Origin: Octopus bimaculoides
Lineage: Eukaryota
Assembly (NCBI RefSeq): GCF_001194135.2
Contig: NC_068992.1
Span: forward strand, 41,814,357 to 41,852,630
Reading direction: 5' to 3'
Length of the DNA: 38,274 nucleotides
The notes beneath the pieces are model-generated. The model was not told the origin of the DNA and did not search any database. It saw only the letters and a list, made by a program, of their open reading frames with translations. Shown here piece after piece: positions 1,223-36,656 of the stretch. Positions within the stretch are counted from its first letter, which is position 1. Every line of letters starts with the position of its first letter. The translations under genes and the position numbers were made by a program.

Positions 1223-1932
1223 AGTGTCATCACCTTTTCAGCGGCCATTGTAATGCGATTTGCCTTTGGCGAAGGAGGGAGTTTGACAAAGCTGCCGTCT
1301 TTTAAGTTTTTTGCCGTGTTGTAGTTTCATCTGGGACTTTGGACATCAGGAGATGAACTCGTTTCTTGAAAACATCTACCACTACTCCATGGAGATCCAT
1401 CAGATATTTTGGCCAGGTATTGAATAGCTGTGGGTCCTTGAATCCCTGGATATATATATTTGGAATAAATCACAACCCATCAGATAGTGATTATTGACAT
1501 CAAATATAATATGATATTTCTTTCTAACTTCTTTAACAGTCACATATATGTTCTTCTCAGCATTTATGTCTCACGACAATAAATTACATAGCCGTGTTTC
1601 TTTTAAAATATCTCACCAATCTGCATAACTTTGATTCATCGTAAACCACAGTCAATTTCTTTTAAAATAGGATACCTGAATAATTGTTGGCCCGGGTTAT
1701 TAAATAGAGTCCGTTTGACACTCATACATACGCACACAAAGTTATACACTATCATTTGCTATTCTATTATATGGATTTCCATTTCAAAGCTTCCTAGCAT
1801 AATTTTTTGGATATCATGTAATGAGTTATAAAATATACTGATCCATATCCAATGAACCTTATATTTTACAGCTTGGTTAGCAAAACAGCAATTCCGTTAA
1901 ATAATAACAGTCAAAAGTGAATTCTACATAGG

Positions 1933-2150
1933 TACGAGGGGGTACTTAATAGTTCCTGCTTTAAGGGTGTTGCGAGAGATCTGGTTAGATGCCCAAATTG
2001 CTGAGTTCTTTGATAGGGCTGAGAAAAACAGAAGGATAGCTCTGATAAGTGTGTGAATTTAAGATGGGAATATGTTCAATAAAATTATAATCAACTGATG
2101 CTCCTGTATTTTCTTTTACCCAAATCCAGCAGCTTTTCAGGTTATCCGTT
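1933..2150 (+). mobile_element. Mariner-derived MITE, copy A
   Basis: It starts TA-CGAGGGGGTACTTAATAGTTCCTG, a mariner-type TIR. It carries the transposase C-terminal remnant DKCVNL..EYVQ* and a degenerate right TIR (CCAGCAGCTTTTCAG). It is collinear with copies at 3626 and 13674. Confidence 0.8.
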
Positions 2151-3625
2151 GGTTATTAGTTCAACAAAGGTTGTCTTCACATCGAGTTGACTCCATGGTC
2201 GTTGGTCGAAGATGACGATGTAGGCGACGGTAGATGCTGGTAATGACGTGCAGCAGATAGGCGTCTCCAACTGTGTTCGTGTTTTTGTTCAACAGAGATG
2301 ATATACACTAACACTCGCTTTAGGATTATAAGGTTTTATTGTAGTGTGGGTTACACATGAATTGCTTTGCATAGAGTTCTGTACAGAGATGTGTAGTGTT
2401 TGATAGAATTGTTTCAAGATAGCTTGAAATAATGACATTGAGTTTGGTCTATACTACTAGTGCACGTGGAAGAAGAATGTTCTTGTGTGAGAGTGGTCAG
2501 CGTTAGTGCGATAAAACAAAACAGCATGCCGGCAGTCCTTCAGAAAAGCGAAACAAGGACCTGAAAGGAACTAGATTGAACAATGGCGGCAGCCACATTA
2601 TATACAATCGGACGTAGCAGAGAACGCCTGTTCGAGAGAAAGCCTGTTAATTCAACCAATTACAGACTGAGTAGAGTTGTAAACTGACAGTGTCGTTTGA
2701 ACCCTCTCTGTGATCGAAAAATGCATGTTTGAACACATGCTAATACAGACATGCTATAGTCTTACGTTCAGTAGCGGTGCTAATGAAGACGTTAAGCCTT
2801 GATTTAATATGTTAAACTTATCTTTATTAATGAATATCGAATTATAAATAGATATATACAAGATTTACACAGACATAAGAGCAAGAACTTGTGACCCGCT
2901 CACGGACTGTTTTCTTAGGAAATATTTGCCCACTGCACTAAAAAGTTTCCCCACCTCTGCCCTAGAACATACGAGGAGGTGATGAAACGTTGTACGATGT
3001 GTAAGTTATTAACGGAAAACCTAAATTCATTGCAACAGTACATATCCTATTGTTGATTCCCTTGTACTCCACTTTTTATGATATATATTATGTGTGTTGT
3101 TTCACCAAGTTCTCTTCCTGCTTTCGCTAATTGTTTTCAACTTTTACTTATAAGTGACTCATTTTACAAACCTCCCTTTAACAAAACTATGTTTGATTGT
3201 GAGAATATTAATGTAGGAATTCTTAGTAGATTAACTAACTAAAACTGGTTTTCTTTCCACTAACTCTATTCGTACAACTCGAATAATATATATTGCAAAC
3301 AGCGCTTGCATATGGTCGAATTAGATTAAATTAGATTGATTAATTTTGAGGAATAACTAATTCAAACAAGTAAACGCATTCGAGATTGCAGCAGTGTGCA
3401 CACCTTGACAAGAACCATCAGAGGTCTCACAACAGAATTTGTATCAGCTTCTAATATTTATTGATACATCCAAAATGTGCAATAAAACTGAATATAGAAA
3501 TGTTTGCCAGGCTCATTTTTGTGAAATATACTGATCCGTATCTAATGACCTTTATATTTTACAGATTGGTTAGTAGGACAGCTATTCCTATGAATAATAA
3601 TATCCCAAAGCGAATCATACATACG

Positions 3626-3840
3626 TACAAGGTGTTACTGAAAAGTTCCTGACTGTAAGGATGCCGGAAAGGTCTGGTTTGAGGCCCATACTTCCGCGTT
3701 CCTGTGAAGGCCTTAGAAAATCTGAAGGACCGCTGCAATAAGTACGTGAATCTGAAAGAGGAATATGTTGAATAAAATCATAATGAACTGATCTTCTTGT
3801 ATTTTACTTTACCCAAAGCGTGGTATATTTCAGCATATAT
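3626..3840 (+). mobile_element. Mariner-derived MITE, copy B
   Basis: TIR TA-CAAGGTGTTACTGAAAAGTTCCTG. The internal frame reads ALENLKDRCNKYVNLKEEYVE*, resembling the mariner transposase C-terminus (L..RW.KC....G.YVE). Confidence 0.85.
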
Positions 3841-4100: not shown

Positions 4101-5495
4101 TTCAAGTAACATTTGAAACCCACCTTTTGTATGGATTTATATACTGACATCAGAGAGAACAAAACTGTCTTTCTGCAATTGCTTTGAAATATAAGTGATG
4201 TGGAAATACAATCTATAATCATTAAAAATTTACATTCTGTTATTTATACATGCATTTGACTTCAAAATACTTAATGGAAAACGCTGCCATTTAAGAGATA
4301 ATTACTAAAATAGGCGTGATTAACATTGTAAGTAATACGACTTCAATATCATCGATCGAATAATATAAAAAAGATGGTGATATCATCGCAGCTGTCACAG
4401 AAAAGAGATTCGCTGTCAGTCACTACTTTTGCTTATAACTACTTTTAAAATAAAATCATTGAATTGACAGCATGAAACCAGAAGATATACAAACTAGAAT
4501 ATGTGCATATACAGGGCCGTTATAAAGTATTTGTGCATATATAAATTTGAAAGCGTTAGTTGTAGACACGAGAAAAATAATGTGAAAATTCTTTCAAAGA
4601 ATTTATAAAATATTACAGATTCATATTCGAGTTGTTAGCTTTCGTTCAACATTAACAGGTTTACATATAACACCCCATGGGCAGTTTTGAAACCGATACA
4701 TAACTCAATTATCCGTTAAATCATGTATTATTTTAATTGCCCTAGCACTGTCATATAGGTATACAATTAAAGGGGGTATATTTTTGCATACACCACGAAA
4801 TATAGTGGATGTAAAGAATGTCTGTTTTTCTTTTTTTTTTTTTCCTTTAAAAAAAGGAAGTAATTTTGCTTTGCTTCGTGGCTGTAAACTAGTTATCTCA
4901 GGCTTCTAAAATCCATTTCAGAATAATTGCGTGGTACGTGTATATATAGGAGGCTACAAAGGATTATGATAATATTATAATAGGGGTGCAAGAATTCATA
5001 TAATACTAGAATTCATTGAAACTATTAAAATCTTTATCACTATTTTTAGTATTTTTATCTTCACTATTTTTTTTTATAATGCATTTATTATTTGCAGGCA
5101 ATGAAATACGTTTTGTGCTCGGGATTTGCTTTCCATTGCTGTATACCTACTTCTGCAGCCCGTTGTATGTGTGTGTATATATATACATACATACACATAT
5201 ACATATAAGGTCCATAAATTCTGTGTGAGATGGGTGTCAAGAGCGTACCAAAGCCCCAAATCGCAGTTGTGTGAAGATATGTCAAAATTTATTCCACCGA
5301 CGCAACGATGAAAATGAGCCGTTTCGAAGAGAATAGTGACAGGGTAAGAGGTCTCAGCCTATTGTTTTGGGCCAGAATCCAAAGAACAGAGTATGGAGTG
5401 GAAATATCAGCCAGCGAAATAGACATATATATATATACACGCACACACACACACACACACATATATACACACATACACACATATATATATATATA

Positions 5496-5657
5496 GGTGC
5501 AGGAGTGGATGTGTGGTAAGAAGCTTGCTTCCCAGCCACATAGTTTCAGGTTCAATTTCACTGTGTGGCACATTGGGCAGGTATCTTCTACTATAGCTAC
5601 GGACCGGTCAAAGCCTTGTGAGTAGATCTGGTAGATGGAAACTGAAGGAATCCCGTC

Positions 5658-5658
<1 letters not shown>
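5496..5658 (+). mobile_element. tRNA-derived SINE family 1, 5' half
   Basis: A-box-like GTGGATGTGTGGTAAG and B-box-like GGTTCAATTTC are followed by the core ending GAAACTGAAGGAATCCCGTCG and then (TA)n. It differs from 6102-6264 at 19 of 163 positions. Confidence 0.9.
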
Positions 5659-5708
<50 letters not shown>

Positions 5709-6064: not shown

Positions 6065-6098
<34 letters not shown>

Positions 6099-6101
6099 GT
6101 A

Positions 6102-6264
6102 GGTGCAGGAGTGGCTATGTGATAAGAAGCTTGCTTCCCAACCACATGGTTCCGGGTTCAGTTCCACTGCGTGGAACATTGGGCAAGTATCTTCTACTAT
6201 AGCTTCGGGCCGGCCAAACCCTTGTGAGTAGATCTGGCAGATGGAAACTGAAAGAAGCCCGTCG
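6102..6264 (+). mobile_element. tRNA-derived SINE family 1, 5' half
   Basis: Same structure as 5496-5658, with B-box-like GGTTCAGTTCC. Confidence 0.9.
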
Positions 6265-6339
6265 TATATATATATTACAAATTGCATCGGGCTCTTCCTA
6301 TTGTCTTTCATCATCATCATCATCATCCTTAATTATAAT

Positions 6340-25261: not shown

Positions 25262-26766
25262 TTTTCATTCCAAGGAGTGCAGCCATGCTGGAGTACCACC
25301 GTTTGCTTTGCTAGACTTTCACTAAACAGCCCCTGATATGTGATATTTGGTGGATGAAGGAGTATGGCGTTGCTGCACCCACCTGTGTTTCTTGCCTTAA
25401 GGTAGGTTGATCCGGAACACTTGACAGGAGATCCAGTTTGTTTTCAAAACGCCTACAACCAATCCATGCAAGTCTCTCAGGCTTTGTGGTGGGATACTGA
25501 AGAGGTGTGGGTTCTTCTAGCCTGACCTGTTACAGTATCTGGTCTGGTATCCTGATGGCAATTTTGGCATCTTTGGTACTACGCAGTAGCATCCCGTCCT
25601 GCTGACAATGCCAATGTTTCGTACAAGTTTTTCTAGGATTTTCTACATGTATATTATTGCATATATTTCCTGCCTTCGTTTTAGGGAGAGGAGTCTTAAC
25701 TCTTTCGGTCTCTCCCAGTAGCTGATATGTCGCATTTTGTCAAACTTCTGTGTGTAGCTTTAATGGATCGCTTCCAGTTCCGTCATTAATTTTACACTGT
25801 TTGATGACCATAGTTGGGAGCAGTAATCCAGATGGCTGAGAACGAAAGTCCTCCAAAGGATCATCACGGATTCCTCTGCACTCGTTTTGAAAGTTCGAAG
25901 GATCCATCCGGCGAAGCACCTGCATTTTATCGCTAACTTGGCCATGTGCACATGGAAAGATACATCGTTACTCATAGCCCAGGTCACGCGCTGGTTTTGA
26001 TTCAAGGATTGCAGTACCTCCTGGGTATTGTACCCTATCTGCTTTTCATTGTGCTTCAGGTGTTATAGCGCATGGCTTGTTATTTTCCGACATTAAACTG
26101 TATGTCGTTTCCCTCAGCCCACTTGTATATTGCATTCATCTCACGTTGTAGATGTGCAACGTCTCCGGGATTCGGTATCATCTGAGAGACTTTTGTATTA
26201 CCTGCATAGCTAGCAAGGGTGGCTACTGGAGCAGCTGAGGACATGTCGGAGAGGGCCACTATGAATAGCAGCGGCCCCAAGAGAGTGCCCTGTGCAACAA
26301 CACTCATTATTTGTGTTTCCTTGGAGGTTGTTCCATTGGCCACCACTACCTGACTTCTCTCTTTTAGAAAGGCATATTGCCATTCTCCAATTTTTCCAAC
26401 TATACCAAGGTTACACATATGTGACAAATCATACTATGGTCGACATTGTAAAAGGCTTTTGCAAAGATATATCATGCCCACATTTGACTTGTTAAACAGC
26501 TGCTATAGCATCCAGTCGTAATGCTGCAAGAGCTGTTACAGGCAGCTTCTACCTGGTCGCAAATTGTGTTGGGTGGCAATCATCAACTCATTCTCTTCAA
26601 GGAATGCAATTAGTTTCCTTTGGACGAATCGTTCCATGACTTTGCGGATGTGCGGGATCAGAGAGATAAGCTTATAAATTTTACCATCTGCTCCTCTTCC
26701 TCTTTATGGATAGAACATATTATTCCTACCTTTAGCTTGTCCGGGAGCTAACCATTTGCGAGGAAG

Positions 26767-27381: not shown

Positions 27382-29372
27382 GATAGATATTACATGAAAA
27401 TCAGTTTCATAATAACATTCAAAAATCAATTGCTAACACAGCATTTGCCGATATTCTATTGATTCATGAATATAACTAAAACGCAGACATGATGTCTGTA
27501 TGGTGTGGGCGTCGTACATGCCAAGTACATTATATAACGCCTTGGTCGTTCCCTTCGTAAACTTAGGTGTGGCATTAATTTTGAATTGGAGGAATTAAAG
27601 GTAGATCGTCAATACTTGTTTATATCCGTATATTCAATTTCGTAGTTCCATGGATCTCAGTTGGCGTAATAAATTCTTTGACCTTACATCACACATACAT
27701 ATATACATATGCATATACATATATATATATGTACATAGAAGGAAGAGTCCCGTGAAATCCATATATATATATATATATATCCAGTAGTAATCCGGGTGGA
27801 ATGTGGGATATTGGTGTACAAATTCACCACATCGAATGATACTAACAGGGTTCCTTCACTTATTGTCTTCTGGAGGTGCTTTAGCATATCTAAATCATCC
27901 CTGATGAAGCTTTTCACATATTTTAGAAACGGTTTGAGTAAGATGTCGAGGAAGTTGCTCAAACGGTGGGTTTCACAAGCATGGCCAGCAATAATGGGTC
28001 TCAGTTTGAGATCAGTAGGGGGAGGAATATTAATGCAGAGGCTTGGAGAAACTTTGTAAGCTTTACAAATATGTGGATTCTTGTGTATTTTGGGCAATCC
28101 ATACAATAGACTAGGTCTGTATTTAAAATTGGATAAATAGTCAATTTCATCTTTAGTTAAACCCTTTCCATGTAATTGAAGTAAGGAGGATAAGTTTTTA
28201 AGAGTCTTCTGTGGGTTGTATTGTACTATCATCTCATAGTAAATATTATTTTCCAACATGGACAGTATTAACTTTTTGTAGTACTCTGTGCCTATCACCC
28301 CTACCACACTTCCTTCGTCGGCTTCTTTAATGGTGAGGTTTAAATCATTTTTTAACACGATTAGGTATTTCCATTCATTTATATTAAGGTTGGATTTAAT
28401 TCGTTGTTTTTGTAGGGTATTGAAAGGAAAACTGGTAATGTGTTCACAAAAAGCATCAAGTGCTTAAATTCTGCCCATTGTAAGACAGTATTCACTTTTG
28501 TTTTTTACTATAGACTCATATTCGCTGGTGTAGTTTTTAAGTGCTTCTGTGAGGAGTAATTTTCGGCAGAAATCCATAGTGTTATCCTTAATTTCATTCG
28601 AGTTCGACCTGCGAGGGGTTGGAGTAAACTTTAAACCTCTTGCTAGAATTCTAGTTTGTGTAACACTTAGGATTTTCTTTGATAAGTTGATTATTTTTGG
28701 TTGTTCTTGTACATTTTGTTCCATTTCACATCTCTGTTTCTCTGATTTAAGTCTAAAAAATGGTTGTAGCAGGTGGGTTGTTGTAGAAAGTTTCTATGGT
28801 GTTTGGTTTGCTGAGGAGAAAATGGGTGTAAAGTGTATCCGTGGTAATATGTTGGTGGTGGGGTGGTGGGGTGGCTGTGAAGCGGGCTAGATTATGGCTG
28901 TACTGAGGGTTGTTATATTGTCTATGGTTCATGTGGTTAGGGTTAAGTTTATTTTTAATATTGTAATGTGGGTGGAGGGAGAAGTTATGCTGTCTCGTTA
29001 GGTTGTGTCTTGTTGAATGATTGAAGTAACCATGTTGAGGGTTAAGTCTCGGAGGTAAATTCTTCCATTTATTGTGAGATGATGGAGGTGGATTGGTAGG
29101 AATTGGTTGCCAAAAGTTTAGGTTAGTCTGGAGGTTTTGATGGAACCTTTGATTTGTATGTAGGATGCCATGAGGATTACGTCCAGATTTTCTATTGTGG
29201 GCTGAATTCCTAATTGTTGTTTGTAAGTTATTTTGGGATGTAAGAGAGGTTAGGTTGGTGGAGTTGTCTCCCCTTGACCGTCTGTGGTCTGTGTTAGATA
29301 AGCGTGGGTTCAATTACTGTGTCCTTAAGTTTGTGAAGGGGAGACAAGCTCCCCCACCCAGCCTAGCCAGCA

Positions 29373-29415
29373 TTCAGGGACATGTTTCTGAGTCTTTGCT
29401 CGTCATCAGCCTGAA
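29373..29415 (-). ncRNA. Minimal type I hammerhead ribozyme in PLE pseudo-LTR
   Basis: The minus strand reads TTCAGG-CTGATGA-CGAGCAAAGACTCA-GAAA-CATGTC-CCTGAA. Stem I is a perfect 6 bp and the CUGAUGA and GAAA boxes are intact. Stem II is GAG/CTC with a C-A closing mismatch, and stem III is the palindrome ACATGT. The GUC triplet gives a predicted cut between 29379 and 29378. Confidence 0.85.
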
Positions 29416-29649
29416 ACAGTAATTGTGTCAAGGCCGACAGGAAGCGGTCCAGCTTCCTAGGGCTAAACAGCAGTAGTGTATTCCCTTATTGGGATTGTCA
29501 CATTAAGTTGACAATATACTACAACTTTGTCGCTCCACTACTGCTTAAATCTCTCTGAGAGATTTAGAAATATTATATTTCTAATTTTGCTGATCAGTGA
29601 ATGAACTTCACTATGATTTACATACGTTTGTGAAGGAGANNNNNNNNNN

Positions 29650-29863
29650 TCAATTACTGTGTCCTTAAGTTTGTGAAGGGGAGACAAGCTCCCCCACCCA
29701 GCCTAGCCAGCATTCAGGGACATGTTTCTGAGTCTTTGCTCGTCATCAGCCTGAAACAGTAATTGTGTCAAGGCCGACAGGAAGCGGTCCAGCTTCCTAG
29801 GGCTAAACAGCAGTAGTGTATTCCCTTATTGGGATTGTCACATTAAGTTGACAATATACTACA

Positions 29864-29868
<5 letters not shown>
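29650..29868 (-). repeat. 219-bp exact duplicate of 29310-29528 (second pseudo-LTR copy)
   Basis: It is base-for-base identical at offset 340 across a 10-N gap. The copies diverge at 29529/29869. Confidence 0.9.
29713..29755 (-). ncRNA. Second copy of the minimal hammerhead ribozyme
   Basis: Identical to 29373-29415. Its reality depends on the duplication not being an assembly artefact. Confidence 0.7.
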
Positions 29869-29906
<38 letters not shown>

Positions 29907-30164
29907 GAATCTGTATATACATAGATACGCACATACTTGCATAGAAATAGATTAAAACGTCAGTCACTCCCAAACATTTACACGTATATGTGAGCGGTGT
30001 TTCTATTTATGTTTGTTTTCAGATGTGAACAATTATATCTGACTTAGATACATGTGTTTTGCTTAACGACAAGTGAATGCTACAATTTATTTTGCAAGAT
30101 TTCCACCAACTCCAATGCAACCCTAAAAGGAAAAAGCATAATCAAACAATAAAAAAAAAAATGA

Positions 30165-30610
30165 AGACAAGCGTGGCTGTGTGGTAAGATGCTTTCCTCC
30201 CAACTACATGGTTACGCGTTCAGTCCCACTGTGGCATCTTCGGCAAGTGTTTTCTACTATAGATTCGGGGAGACCCAAACCGAAACTGAAAGAAGCCCGT
30301 CGTATATCCATTCACCCAGCCATCAATATATCTGTGCGTGTTTGTGTGTGTGTGGGTGTGTGTGCGTGTGTGTGTGTGCGTGTGTGCTTATGTGCATGTG
30401 TGTATGTGTTTGCGTGTGTGCGTGTGTGCGTGTGTGTGTGTTTGTCCCCCATCACCGCTTCACAAGCGTTGTTGCTGTTCTTATGCCCCTATCAAGACAA
30501 TAAGAACTAGGCTTAAATAAAATAAGTCCTGGGGTCGATTTGTACGACGAAAATCCCGTGAAAGCCCTGCTCCAGCATGACTGCATTCAAGTGGTTCAAA
30601 CAAATAGATG
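30165..30610 (+). mobile_element. SINE family 1, near full length with internal (TG)n
   Basis: Head GTGGCTGTGTGGTAAG..GTTCAGTCCC, core GAAACTGAAAGAAGCCCGTCG, internal microsatellite, body TTTGTCCCCC..AATAAGTCCTGGGGTCGATT and tail GCTCCAGCATGACTGCA are all present. Confidence 0.88.
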
Positions 30611-33384: not shown

Positions 33385-33612
33385 CCTTACCACCATCGGG
33401 GACAAACACAGATACACAAATATATACACACGCATACATATATATATACATATATTCATATATACGACGGGCTCCTATCAGTTTCCGTCTACCAAATCCA
33501 CTCACAAGGCTTTGGTCTGCCCGAGGCTATAGTAGAAGACACTTGCCCAAGGTTCCACGCTGTGGGAATAGACCCGGAGCCAAGCTACTTACCACACAGC
33601 CACTCCTGCGTC
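33385..33612 (-). mobile_element. SINE family 1, 5' half
   Basis: The reverse complement reads GCAGGAGTGGCTGTGTGGTAAGTAGC..GGCAAGTGTCTTCTACTATAGCCTCGGG..GTGAGTGGATTTGGTAGACGGAAACTGA, then microsatellite, then TGTTTGTCCCC. Confidence 0.9.
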
Positions 33613-33816
33613 TATATATATATAANNNNNNNNNNNNNNNNNNNNNNNNNNNNNNNNNNNNNNNNNNNNNNNNNNNNNNNNNNNNNNNNNNNNNNNNNNN
33701 NNNNNNNNNNNNNNNNNNNNNNNNNNNNNNNNNNNNNNNNNNNNNNNNNNNNNNNNNNNNNNNNNNNNNNNNNNNNNNNNNNNNNNNNNNNNNNNNNNNN
33801 NNNNNNTATATATATT

Positions 33817-36533: not shown

Positions 36534-36656
36534 TTTATTTAAAAGCAGCAGAAATATAACAAAAGACTGTTACTCGGAGTTTCACGTTCCCGATGAAGGG
36601 GAACGTGGAACTTCGAGCAGCAGTCTTTTGTTATATTTCTCTTGCTTTTAAATAAA
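36534..36656. repeat. Long inverted repeat (58-bp arms, 7-nt loop), probably an inverted PLE pseudo-LTR junction
   Basis: Arms 36534-36591 and 36599-36656 differ at 6 of 58 positions. The centre contains split hammerhead-like boxes. Confidence 0.9.

What the first reader, a model, noticed from the sequence alone, without database searches (positions are those of the whole stretch)
29373..29415. Self-cleaving hammerhead ribozyme upstream of a Penelope RT ORF
Seen in sequence: the minus strand reads TTCAGG CTGATGA CGAGCAAAGACTCA GAAA CATGTC CCTGAA. It has a perfect stem I, intact catalytic boxes, a GUC site and a 2-bp stem III that is the palindrome ACATGT, about 60 bp upstream of the element's first ORF. 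Established: PLE pseudo-LTRs carry minimal type I hammerheads whose palindromic stem III works as a dimer. Inference: the C-A mismatch closing stem II is CpG decay of an ancestral C-G pair (CTCG to CTCA), so the ancestral ribozyme would be canonical. No ORF-based annotation would show this.
Basis: partly seen in the sequence, partly recalled or inferred. Interest (0 to 1): 0.85.

Follow-up and report, generated by a model that had tools for sequence, protein, structure and literature searches.

The report
Hammerhead ribozyme pair beside Penelope remnant
The window, probably from an octopus genome, holds a real hammerhead-ribozyme motif in two identical copies joined to the front end of a broken Penelope-like retrotransposon, an association already well described in animals, so this is a new example and not a new kind of thing.

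Summary
The 43-nt motif is on the minus strand at 29415->29373, exactly as described. It has a 6-bp stem I, CUGAUGA, a 3-bp helix II with a C.A mismatch at its base, GAA, the palindrome ACAUGU and a GUC site. A structural descriptor finds it twice in the window, against 0.023 hits expected per shuffle.

Both lie in a 219-nt perfect direct repeat, 340 nt apart across a 10-N gap.

No Rfam family reaches its threshold. The only hammerhead hit is a full-length, sub-threshold Hammerhead_HH9 alignment (19.3 bits against 52).

The "first ORF 60 bp downstream" is a compositional artefact. The real Penelope-like ORF starts at ATG 28724, about 650 nt downstream. It has one in-frame stop and breaks off at RT motif 2, and its closest relatives are Octopus elements. 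An intact relative encodes RT plus GIY-YIG.

The hammerhead-bearing repeat ends exactly where the element's 5' end begins (29310|29309). It is therefore either a pseudo-LTR or a retrozyme-like terminal piece.

The CpG-decay idea could not be tested because no other family copies were reachable. The proposed C-G ancestor would also not be the canonical G10.1-C11.1 pair.

Verdict: a new member of a known kind. Cleavage was not tested.

The parts
29373..29415 (-). Proximal hammerhead motif (HHR-2), type I, 43 nt. Predicted cleavage 3' of C17, between 29379 and 29378.
   Evidence: Sequence; descriptor hit; 0.023 hits expected per shuffle
29713..29755 (-). Distal hammerhead motif (HHR-1), identical to HHR-2. 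Predicted cleavage between 29719 and 29718.
29356..29427 (-). Extended hammerhead. After an internal loop (CUGU / UGC), a possible outer closing stem AAUUA/UGGCU continues helix I, as in canonical metazoan type I hammerheads.
   Evidence: Full-length (1-77) alignment to Rfam Hammerhead_HH9, 19.3 bits (gathering 52), E 0.007 in a 91-nt search. Helix III is deleted and the C.A pair is flagged as non-standard.
29310..29528 (-). Proximal copy of the 219-nt perfect direct repeat that carries HHR-2. It ends 63 nt after the ribozyme, at the junction with the PLE 5' end.
   Evidence: The junction is supported by P0121, whose similarity stops at about 29308-29311.
29650..29868 (-). Distal copy of the 219-nt repeat (100% identical), carrying HHR-1. 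It starts directly after a (TA)n run and ends at the assembly gap.
29640..29649 (.). 10-N assembly gap between the two repeat copies. Its true length and content are unknown.
29529..29639 (-). 111 nt of single-copy non-coding sequence between the gap and the proximal repeat. It begins with tctccttcacaaac, which echoes tctccccttcacaaac inside the repeat.
   Evidence: no PLE protein match
29869..29903 (.). (TA)n microsatellite at the upstream edge of the composite. (TA)n is listed as a preferred PLE target in PMC8557442.
   Evidence: PMC8557442
28725..29309 (-). PLE 5' leader (non-coding). From 29100 downwards it is 86% identical to Octopus sinensis copy L003.
   Evidence: The 186-aa ORF in it has no homologues.
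27791..28724 (-). PLE ORF remnant: ATG at 28724, motifs NLSKK..GLKFTPTP, YGLPKIHK and DVVNLYTNIPH (RT motif 2), then broken off in a TA-rich microsatellite. No rest of the RT and no GIY-YIG domain.
   Evidence: 60% identity to P0001 over 298 aa, E 1.7e-107
28464..28466 (-). In-frame stop codon inside the PLE ORF remnant.

Best explanation
This is a genuine type I hammerhead ribozyme sequence of the kind carried by Penelope-like retrotransposons (PLEs). It sits in a terminal repeat piece joined head-to-tail to the 5' end of a dead PLE copy. That copy is complete at its 5' end, has one stop codon, and is cut off at RT motif 2.

Shown by the data:
- the motif and its two identical copies on the coding strand
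- the exact junction between the repeat and the PLE 5' end at 29310|29309
- the PLE identity of the ORF
- the (TA)n run at the upstream edge

Inferred mechanism:
- Helix III (A-U and C-G around a 2-nt loop) cannot close within one molecule.
- Two copies on one read-through transcript therefore pair their ACAUGU palindromes into a 6-bp helix and swap stem I strands, forming a double hammerhead.
- Each active site cuts 3' of C17.
- Cleavage would release an RNA of about 340 nt (plus whatever the gap hides) with 5'-OH and 2',3'-cyclic phosphate ends.
- It would also leave a PLE RNA starting at 29378 with a 654-nt leader.

The piece is most likely the 3' end of an upstream tandem PLE copy, that is, a pseudo-LTR. 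The C.A pair at the base of helix II is a weakness of unknown effect. At this locus the element can no longer transpose on its own.
For: - Motif significance.
- The monomer cannot form helix III and does not fold into a hammerhead in its sequence context.
- The double hammerhead scores -18.2 kcal/mol against 2 x -8.4 for two monomers. The intermolecular helix III has probability about 0.85, and about 0.99 in a model transcript spanning both copies.
- The architecture aligns end to end with Rfam HH9.
- PLE ORF: the best relatives are Octopus, Argonauta and Mytilus proteins, some with GIY-YIG. tblastn hits cover 28724-27750 only.
- The intact relative L006 10001-12300 is a 766-aa ORF with RVT_1 and GIY-YIG above the Pfam cut-offs.
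- Junction: the only other protein-level trace of the leader, O. bimaculoides A0A0L8FG88 (P0121), loses similarity exactly at the repeat boundary.
- Geometry: in L006 a hammerhead-like motif with the same ACAUGU helix III lies 65 nt before the element's 3' end at (TA)n. Here the distance from the ribozyme to the end of the repeat is 63 nt.
- Octopus loci around PLEs are enriched for such motifs: 5 found against 0.17 expected.
- Literature: PMC4209133, PMC6765202, PMC8557442, PMC11167929.
Against: - No Rfam family reaches its gathering score.
- The closing pair of helix II is C.A, not the conserved G10.1-C11.1.
- The two copies are identical, so there is no covariation evidence at all.
- The closest related copy that has a 3' end (L003, 86% identical in the leader and ORF) shows no similarity to the hammerhead piece in its 3' UTR.
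- The motif looks more like the 'canonical' type I hammerheads of non-LTR retrozymes than the PLE 'min-HHR' with a long helix II and a 5' bulge (PMC4209133, PMC7229834).
- Forcing the full double hammerhead in the two-copy model transcript costs 15 kcal/mol relative to the MFE.
- PLE hammerheads cleave poorly in vitro, and in the Anolis element cleavage needed the protein and was dispensable for insertion (PMC4209133, PMC11167929).
Confidence: 0.75

Rival explanations
1. The hammerhead piece is not this PLE's own pseudo-LTR. It is a non-autonomous, retrozyme-like repeat with a unit of roughly 340 bp and a canonical type I hammerhead. It became joined to the PLE 5' end, for example when the reverse transcriptase switched template from the end of the PLE RNA onto a multimeric or circular retrozyme RNA. 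That would give about 1.6 units upstream of the PLE.
For: - Two hammerheads 340 nt apart, GC about 42%, and no coding capacity. This matches the definition in PMC7229834 (repeat units of 150-450 bp, GC below 45%, canonical type I hammerhead with 6-bp helix I, 4-bp helix II and a palindromic mini helix III).
- The best Rfam similarity is to canonical HH9.
- The 3' UTR of L003 lacks the piece.
- The motif that lies at the 3' end of a related intact PLE (L006) is of a different, U3-A8 type.
Against: - Only 219 of the 340 nt are repeated, and the sequence after the second copy is the PLE leader, not the next unit.
- The 10-N gap could hide a whole PLE copy.
- The 63-nt and 65-nt distances to the element's end fit a PLE 3' terminus.
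- Retrozymes are reported to derive from pseudo-LTRs anyway (bioRxiv 10.64898/2026.07.22.740005), so the two readings are not sharply distinct.
Confidence: 0.3
2. The motif is an inactive relic. The C.A mismatch next to the catalytic core, in a dead and CpG-depleted element, means the RNA no longer cleaves.
For: - C10.1.A11.1 in place of the conserved G-C.
- The element is truncated and has a stop codon.
- CpG observed/expected is 0.26 in the repeat and 0.38 in the element, against 0.70 in the window. CpG decay has therefore occurred, and CTCG->CTCA is a possible path.
Against: - All 11 core positions, A15.1-U16.1, C17 and the perfect stem I are intact.
- The CpG at 10.1/10.2 is still present.
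- Mismatches at the base of helix II occur in an active axolotl hammerhead (PMC7229834).
- They also occur in the hammerhead-like motif of an intact Octopus PLE.
Confidence: 0.35
3. The second copy is an assembly artefact: a repeat or haplotype variant placed twice around a scaffold gap. In that case the genome holds a single hammerhead here and has no local partner for dimerisation.
For: - 100% identity over 219 nt.
- One copy ends exactly at a 10-N gap.
- The window is a heavily gapped draft, 17% N.
Against: - The sequences flanking the two copies on the far side differ: (TA)n on one side and the 111-nt segment on the other.
- The contig ends are not duplicates of each other, so this is not the simple unmerged-overlap artefact.
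- Partial tandems are the normal state of PLEs (PMC8557442).
Confidence: 0.2
4. The match to the hammerhead consensus is due to chance.
For: No Rfam hit at gathering thresholds.
Against: - 0.023 hits expected per window, and 1 in 1000 shuffles as good as the real motif.
- It lies on the coding strand at the exact terminus of a PLE.
- The flanks also fit the canonical type I model.
Confidence: 0.02

Closest known systems
Hammerhead ribozymes in the pseudo-LTRs of Penelope-like elements (Cervera & De la Pena 2014, PMC4209133; Lunse et al. 2017, which I could not read)
   Same: - Type I topology.
- Palindromic helix III that is too short for a monomer, so a dimer is needed.
- Located in the terminal repeat on the coding strand of a PLE.
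- (TA)n at the insertion edge.
- An extra nucleotide after A9.
   Different: - Helix II is short (3 bp plus a mismatch, with a 6-nt loop) and helix I is a full 6 bp, unlike the typical min-HHR (helix II 7-8 bp, helix I 4-5 bp).
- There is also an unpaired A between helix II and G12, so the junction is a 1x1 C.A mismatch and not a simple 5' bulge.
Canonical metazoan type I hammerheads of non-LTR retrozymes (Cervera & de la Pena 2020, PMC7229834) and Rfam Hammerhead_HH9 (RF02275)
   Same: - 6-bp helix I followed by an internal loop and an outer stem.
- 4-position helix II with a 6-nt A-rich loop (CAAAGA here, CAAAAA in HH9).
- Helix III of 1-2 bp with a 2-4 nt palindromic loop.
- Copies a few hundred bp apart, and low GC.
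   Different: - Scores only 19.3 bits against a gathering score of 52.
- C.A at 10.1/11.1.
- Only two copies, and the repeat unit is not fully repeated.
- It is fused directly to a PLE 5' end and is not part of an ORF-less array.
Poseidon PLE of Anolis carolinensis (PAc), biochemically characterised (PMC11167929)
   Same: A PLE with a hammerhead near the boundary between pseudo-LTR and ORF, in a repetitive tandem locus.
   Different: - In PAc the ORF starts inside the hammerhead. Here the ATG is 654 nt downstream.
- The PAc hammerhead needed the protein for cleavage, and cleavage was dispensable for insertion in vitro. Nothing was tested here.

Membership tests
Hammerhead ribozyme, type I | Conserved core: C3 U4 G5 A6 N7 G8 A9 ... 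G12 A13 A14, in that order | tested here: met
   CUGAUGA at 29409-29403 and GAA at 29388-29386
Hammerhead ribozyme, type I | Cleavage site H17 preceded by U16.1 that pairs with A15.1, with helix I open at the 5' and 3' ends | tested here: met
   A15.1 at 29385, U16.1 at 29380, C17 at 29379; 6-bp open helix I
Hammerhead ribozyme, type I | Helix III able to form | tested here: inconclusive
   Impossible in a monomer because the loop is only 2 nt. A 6-bp intermolecular ACAUGU helix is predicted with P about 0.85 in a dimer. This is energy-model evidence only.
Hammerhead ribozyme, type I | G10.1-C11.1 pair closing helix II | tested here: not met
   C.A at 29402/29389, followed by G-C. Precedents for mismatches here: PMC7229834, and the L006 motif.
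Hammerhead ribozyme, type I | Score at or above an Rfam hammerhead gathering threshold | tested here: not met
   No hit on the whole window or on 1.2 kb. HH9 scores 19.3 bits against 52 on 91 nt.
Hammerhead ribozyme, type I | Helices maintained by covariation among family copies | tested here: inconclusive
   Only two copies were found and they are identical. There are none in ten Octopus loci or in the metagenome scans.
Hammerhead ribozyme, type I | Site-specific self-cleavage | not testable with these tools
   Needs transcription and cleavage assays.
Penelope-like element (EN+ PLE) | PLE-type reverse transcriptase with the characteristic N-terminal region | tested here: met
   A 309-aa remnant, 60% identical to O. 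sinensis P0001 (E 7e-102). The motifs GLKFTPTP, YGLPKIHK and DVVNLYTNIPH are present. Only the part up to RT motif 2 survives.
Penelope-like element (EN+ PLE) | C-terminal GIY-YIG endonuclease | tested here: not met
   Absent from the window because the copy is truncated at about 27790. It is present in relatives: L006 ORF (GIY-YIG 30.2 bits, cut-off 22.6) and P0087.
Penelope-like element (EN+ PLE) | Pseudo-LTRs from partial tandem insertion, carrying a hammerhead | tested here: inconclusive
   A hammerhead-bearing repeat abuts the 5' end. The element's own 3' end is missing, and L003's 3' UTR does not contain the piece.
Non-LTR retrozyme | Short (150-450 bp) head-to-tail repeats, each with a type I hammerhead, non-coding, GC below 45% | tested here: inconclusive
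   Two hammerheads 340 nt apart, GC about 42%, no ORF match. However, only 219 nt are repeated, and a gap of unknown size lies between the copies.
Non-LTR retrozyme | Expressed as small circular RNA | not testable with these tools
   Needs RNA data.

The most novel reading that the evidence does not exclude
The locus may be a direct physical chimera of a retrozyme-like hammerhead repeat and a full-length PLE 5' end in a cephalopod. That would be a footprint of PLE reverse transcriptase switching templates onto a multimeric or circular hammerhead RNA. In addition, the 1x1 mismatch between the catalytic core and a G-C pair (C.A here, A.C in an intact Octopus PLE, possibly U.U in another Octopus motif) may be a conserved, functional variant of the hammerhead junction and not damage.
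Probability: 0.15. Interest if true: 0.45.

Novelty: new member of a known kind. Interest (0 to 1): 0.25.

Why it matters
The locus adds a cephalopod example to the well-documented link between Penelope-like elements and dimer-dependent hammerhead ribozymes. It shows the ribozyme piece joined base-for-base to the element's 5' end. Its architecture lies between the PLE 'min-HHR' and the canonical retrozyme hammerhead, which fits the recent proposal that animal retrozymes derive from PLE pseudo-LTRs. It does not open a new question. Its practical value is for repeat annotation: ORF-based or Rfam-threshold annotation misses it. It could also serve as a test substrate for how far the junction between helix II and the core tolerates mismatches.

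Tried and rejected
- **Rfam.** At gathering thresholds on the whole window, and at E<=10 on 1.2 kb, there was no hammerhead hit. A weak HH9 alignment appeared only on a 91-nt slice.
The 186-aa ORF has no homologues and no Pfam hit, so I rejected it as coding.
- **Family consensus for position 29389.** Ten loci around related PLE genes in O. sinensis and O. bimaculoides were fetched. None contains the hammerhead or the 219-nt or 111-nt segments. The closest copies, L002 and L003, are 5'-truncated.
- **Protein databases as a proxy for DNA.** I used the plus-strand 75-aa ORF that overlaps the ribozyme. It gave one O. bimaculoides protein (P0121), which is not on record in the contig index.
- **Metagenome scans.** Two exact-pattern scans found nothing.
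- **Alignment with L006.** Aligning the piece with the 3' end of L006 gave no meaningful alignment beyond the core.
- **The L006 motif in Rfam.** It gets no hammerhead hit, so I use it only as a lead.
- **Lunse et al. 2017.** The paper is not in the library.
- **Monomer fold.** The MFE fold in sequence context is not a hammerhead and is no more stable than shuffles, z = +1.06.

Full report
**1. Observation**

The minus strand 29415->29373 reads TTCAGG CTGATGA CGAGCAAAGACTCA GAAA CATGTC CCTGAA. In hammerhead numbering:
- helix I is 6 perfect pairs, 29415-29410 with 29378-29373
- C3-A9 is CUGAUGA
- helix II is a C.A mismatch, then G-C, A-U, G-C, around loop CAAAGA
- G12-A14 is GAA
- helix III is A15.1-U16.1 and C15.2-G16.2 around a 2-nt loop, i.e. 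the palindrome ACAUGU

A structural descriptor I wrote finds exactly two hits in the window, both on the minus strand. In 1000 dinucleotide shuffles the mean was 0.023 hits, and only one hit was as good as the real one. The plain pattern scan gives 2 exact matches against 0.17 expected. The motif is therefore real and not a chance match.

**2.

The second hit is an identical copy at 29755->29713. Both lie in a 219-nt, 100% identical direct repeat (29310-29528 and 29650-29868), 340 nt apart start to start. On the minus strand the order is:
- (TA)n
- 219-nt repeat with HHR-1
- 10-N gap (29649-29640)
- 111 nt of single-copy sequence
- 219-nt repeat with HHR-2
- PLE leader

The window is a heavily gapped draft with 14 gaps and 17% N. 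The true distance across the gap is therefore unknown. The arrangement is not the simple artefact of unmerged overlapping contig ends, because the outer flanks of the two copies differ.

**3. Database tests of the ribozyme**

Rfam gives no family at gathering score on the whole window. It gives no hammerhead at E<=10 on 1.2 kb.

On a 91-nt slice the best hit is Hammerhead_HH9: 19.3 bits (gathering 52), E 0.007, aligned over the whole model. In that alignment:
- helix I, the core, the 4-position helix II and its A-rich 6-nt loop line up
- helix III is deleted
- the 10.1/11.1 pair is flagged as non-standard
- an internal loop plus an outer stem (AAUUA/UGGCU, 4 of 5 pairs) continues helix I, as in canonical metazoan type I hammerheads

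This supports the architecture. It does not amount to membership by Rfam's criteria.

**4. Folding**

- A monomer cannot form helix III. In 72 nt of context the MFE structure is not a hammerhead and is no more stable than shuffles, z = +1.06.
- Two copies can form the classical double hammerhead, with helices I and III intermolecular, at -18.2 kcal/mol against 2 x -8.4 for separate monomers. The 6-bp ACAUGU helix has probability about 0.85.
- In a model transcript spanning both copies that helix has probability about 0.99. Forcing the complete double hammerhead costs 15 kcal/mol relative to the MFE.
- These are energy-model results only.

**5. The neighbouring element**

It has no Pfam hit and no homologue. 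It is not open in the closest related copy.

The real coding region is in another frame. It starts at ATG 28724 and reads MEQNVQEQPKIINLSKK...GLKFTPTP...YGLPKIHK...DVVNLYTNIPH. It has one in-frame stop at 28466-28464 and breaks off at about 27790 in a TA-rich microsatellite.

Its best relatives are predicted proteins of Octopus sinensis, O. bimaculoides, Argonauta and bivalves, with identities from 60% over 96% of the query up to 84% over partial matches. Some of these carry GIY-YIG.

PLE proteins hit the window only at 28724-27750. [quoted passage not shown]

The neighbour is therefore a Penelope-like element, but a dead copy with only its front third. The ribozyme cleavage site lies 654 nt upstream of its ATG.

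**6. Where the hammerhead piece ends**

An exhaustive protein search used the plus-strand ORF that overlaps the ribozyme. It found one protein, O. bimaculoides A0A0L8FG88 (P0121). This is evidently an antisense ORF over another copy of the PLE leader. Its similarity stops at window position 29308-29311, the end of the 219-nt repeat.

So 29310|29309 is a real junction. The PLE unit begins at 29309, and the hammerhead-bearing repeat is a separate piece that ends 63 nt after the ribozyme.

In L006 a hammerhead-like motif lies 65 nt before the element's 3' end, next to (TA)n. It has a U3-A8 core, an A.C mismatch followed by G-C, the same ACAUGU helix III, and A17. That is the same geometry. It favours reading the window's repeat as the 3' terminus of an upstream tandem PLE copy, i.e. 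a pseudo-LTR, which is the normal arrangement of PLEs (PMC8557442, PMC6765202).

Two observations point the other way:
- The closest copy with a 3' end (L003, 86% identical over 1300 nt of leader and ORF) has nothing similar in its 3' UTR.
- The window's ribozyme looks like the canonical type I hammerheads of non-LTR retrozymes (repeat units of a few hundred bp, GC below 45%; PMC7229834). It looks less like the PLE 'min-HHR' (PMC4209133).

A 2026 preprint argues that retrozymes are derivatives of PLE pseudo-LTRs (10.64898/2026.07.22.740005). The two readings therefore lie on a continuum. I put about 0.55-0.6 on pseudo-LTR and about 0.3 on a retrozyme-like piece.

**7. The C.A mismatch**

The two copies are identical. 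None of the ten Octopus loci fetched around related PLE genes contains the piece, and two metagenome scans were empty.

In favour of CpG decay, the element is CpG-depleted. Observed/expected is 0.26 in the repeat and 0.38 in the element, against 0.70 in the window.

- A C10.1-G11.1 ancestor would not be 'canonical', because the conserved pair is G10.1-C11.1 (PMC4209133).
- PLE hammerheads usually have an extra nucleotide after A9 (PMC4209133). With that reading the closing pair here is the conserved G-C, and the C and A form a 1x1 loop.
- L006's motif has an A.C at the same place that CpG decay cannot produce.
- An active axolotl hammerhead has a U.U at the base of helix II (PMC7229834).

The question stays open.

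**8. Mechanism and status**

Most likely, read-through transcripts carrying two copies form a double hammerhead and are cut 3' of C17 at 29719|29718 and 29379|29378. This would trim upstream sequence from the PLE RNA. It would also release a short RNA with ends that could be ligated.

This is inferred from the architecture and from the literature. PLE hammerheads cleave weakly in vitro (PMC4209133). In the one biochemically studied PLE, cleavage needed the protein and was not required for insertion (PMC11167929). At this locus the PLE is defective.

**9. Verdict**

This is a genuine hammerhead sequence associated with a PLE, and a new cephalopod example of a known kind. Interest is low to moderate.

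Noticed in passing
window 25760-26427 (-): Two adjacent ORF fragments with LINE-like reverse-transcriptase motifs (LGPLLF, YAGNTK, FNVGK). Pfam RVT_1 hits 26080-26427 at E 0.011, below its cut-off; 25760-26005 has no Pfam hit. This is a different retroelement from the PLE and lies downstream of the PLE remnant on the same strand.
   Followed up: partly
window 5461-5669, 6066-6275, 33398-33623, 30173-30307: A multi-copy repeat of roughly 200 nt. The same repeat occurs many times in O. sinensis and O. bimaculoides loci L005, L006 and L007 at 80-89% identity. It is probably a SINE-like family. One copy lies just upstream of the (TA)n that borders the hammerhead-bearing repeat.
   Followed up: no
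window 36534-36656: A 123-nt stretch that matches its own reverse complement at 86%, i.e. a near-perfect palindrome.
   Followed up: no
window 1831-2124 and 3524-3817: Direct repeat of about 295 nt at 77.5% identity.
   Followed up: no
L006 13213-13257 (+): Hammerhead-like motif with the U3-A8 covariant core (UUGAUAA), an A.C mismatch followed by G-C at the base of helix II, helix III ACAUGU and A17. It lies 65 nt before the (TA)n at the 3' end of an intact 766-aa RT plus GIY-YIG PLE. It gets no Rfam hammerhead hit.
   Followed up: partly
L001 6908-6944 (+); L003 8497-8534 (-); L007 481-523 (+), 69-111 (-), 19983-20027 (+); L006 16093-16147 (+); L009 6678-6718 (-): Further hammerhead-like motifs in Octopus loci, most with a palindromic helix III (AAUU, AGUAUACU, ACAGCUGU, ACAUGU). 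The L003 and L007 19983 motifs are not fully palindromic. Five palindromic hits were found in the 151 kb of the first eight loci, against 0.17 expected from shuffles.
   Followed up: partly
window 29195-29422 (+) and protein P0121: The O. bimaculoides 'uncharacterized protein' A0A0L8FG88 appears to be a spurious antisense ORF over a PLE 5' leader.
   Followed up: partly
window 27745-27790 and 29869-29903: The whole composite (hammerhead repeats plus PLE remnant) is bounded by TA-rich microsatellites on both sides. The 3' truncation of the PLE at RT motif 2 is unusual for target-primed reverse transcription. It may reflect a later deletion or an assembly join through (TA)n.
   Followed up: no
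window 29878-29947: The sub-threshold Rfam mir-297 and mir-1277 hits lie on (TA)n/(TG)n microsatellite and are spurious.
   Followed up: yes
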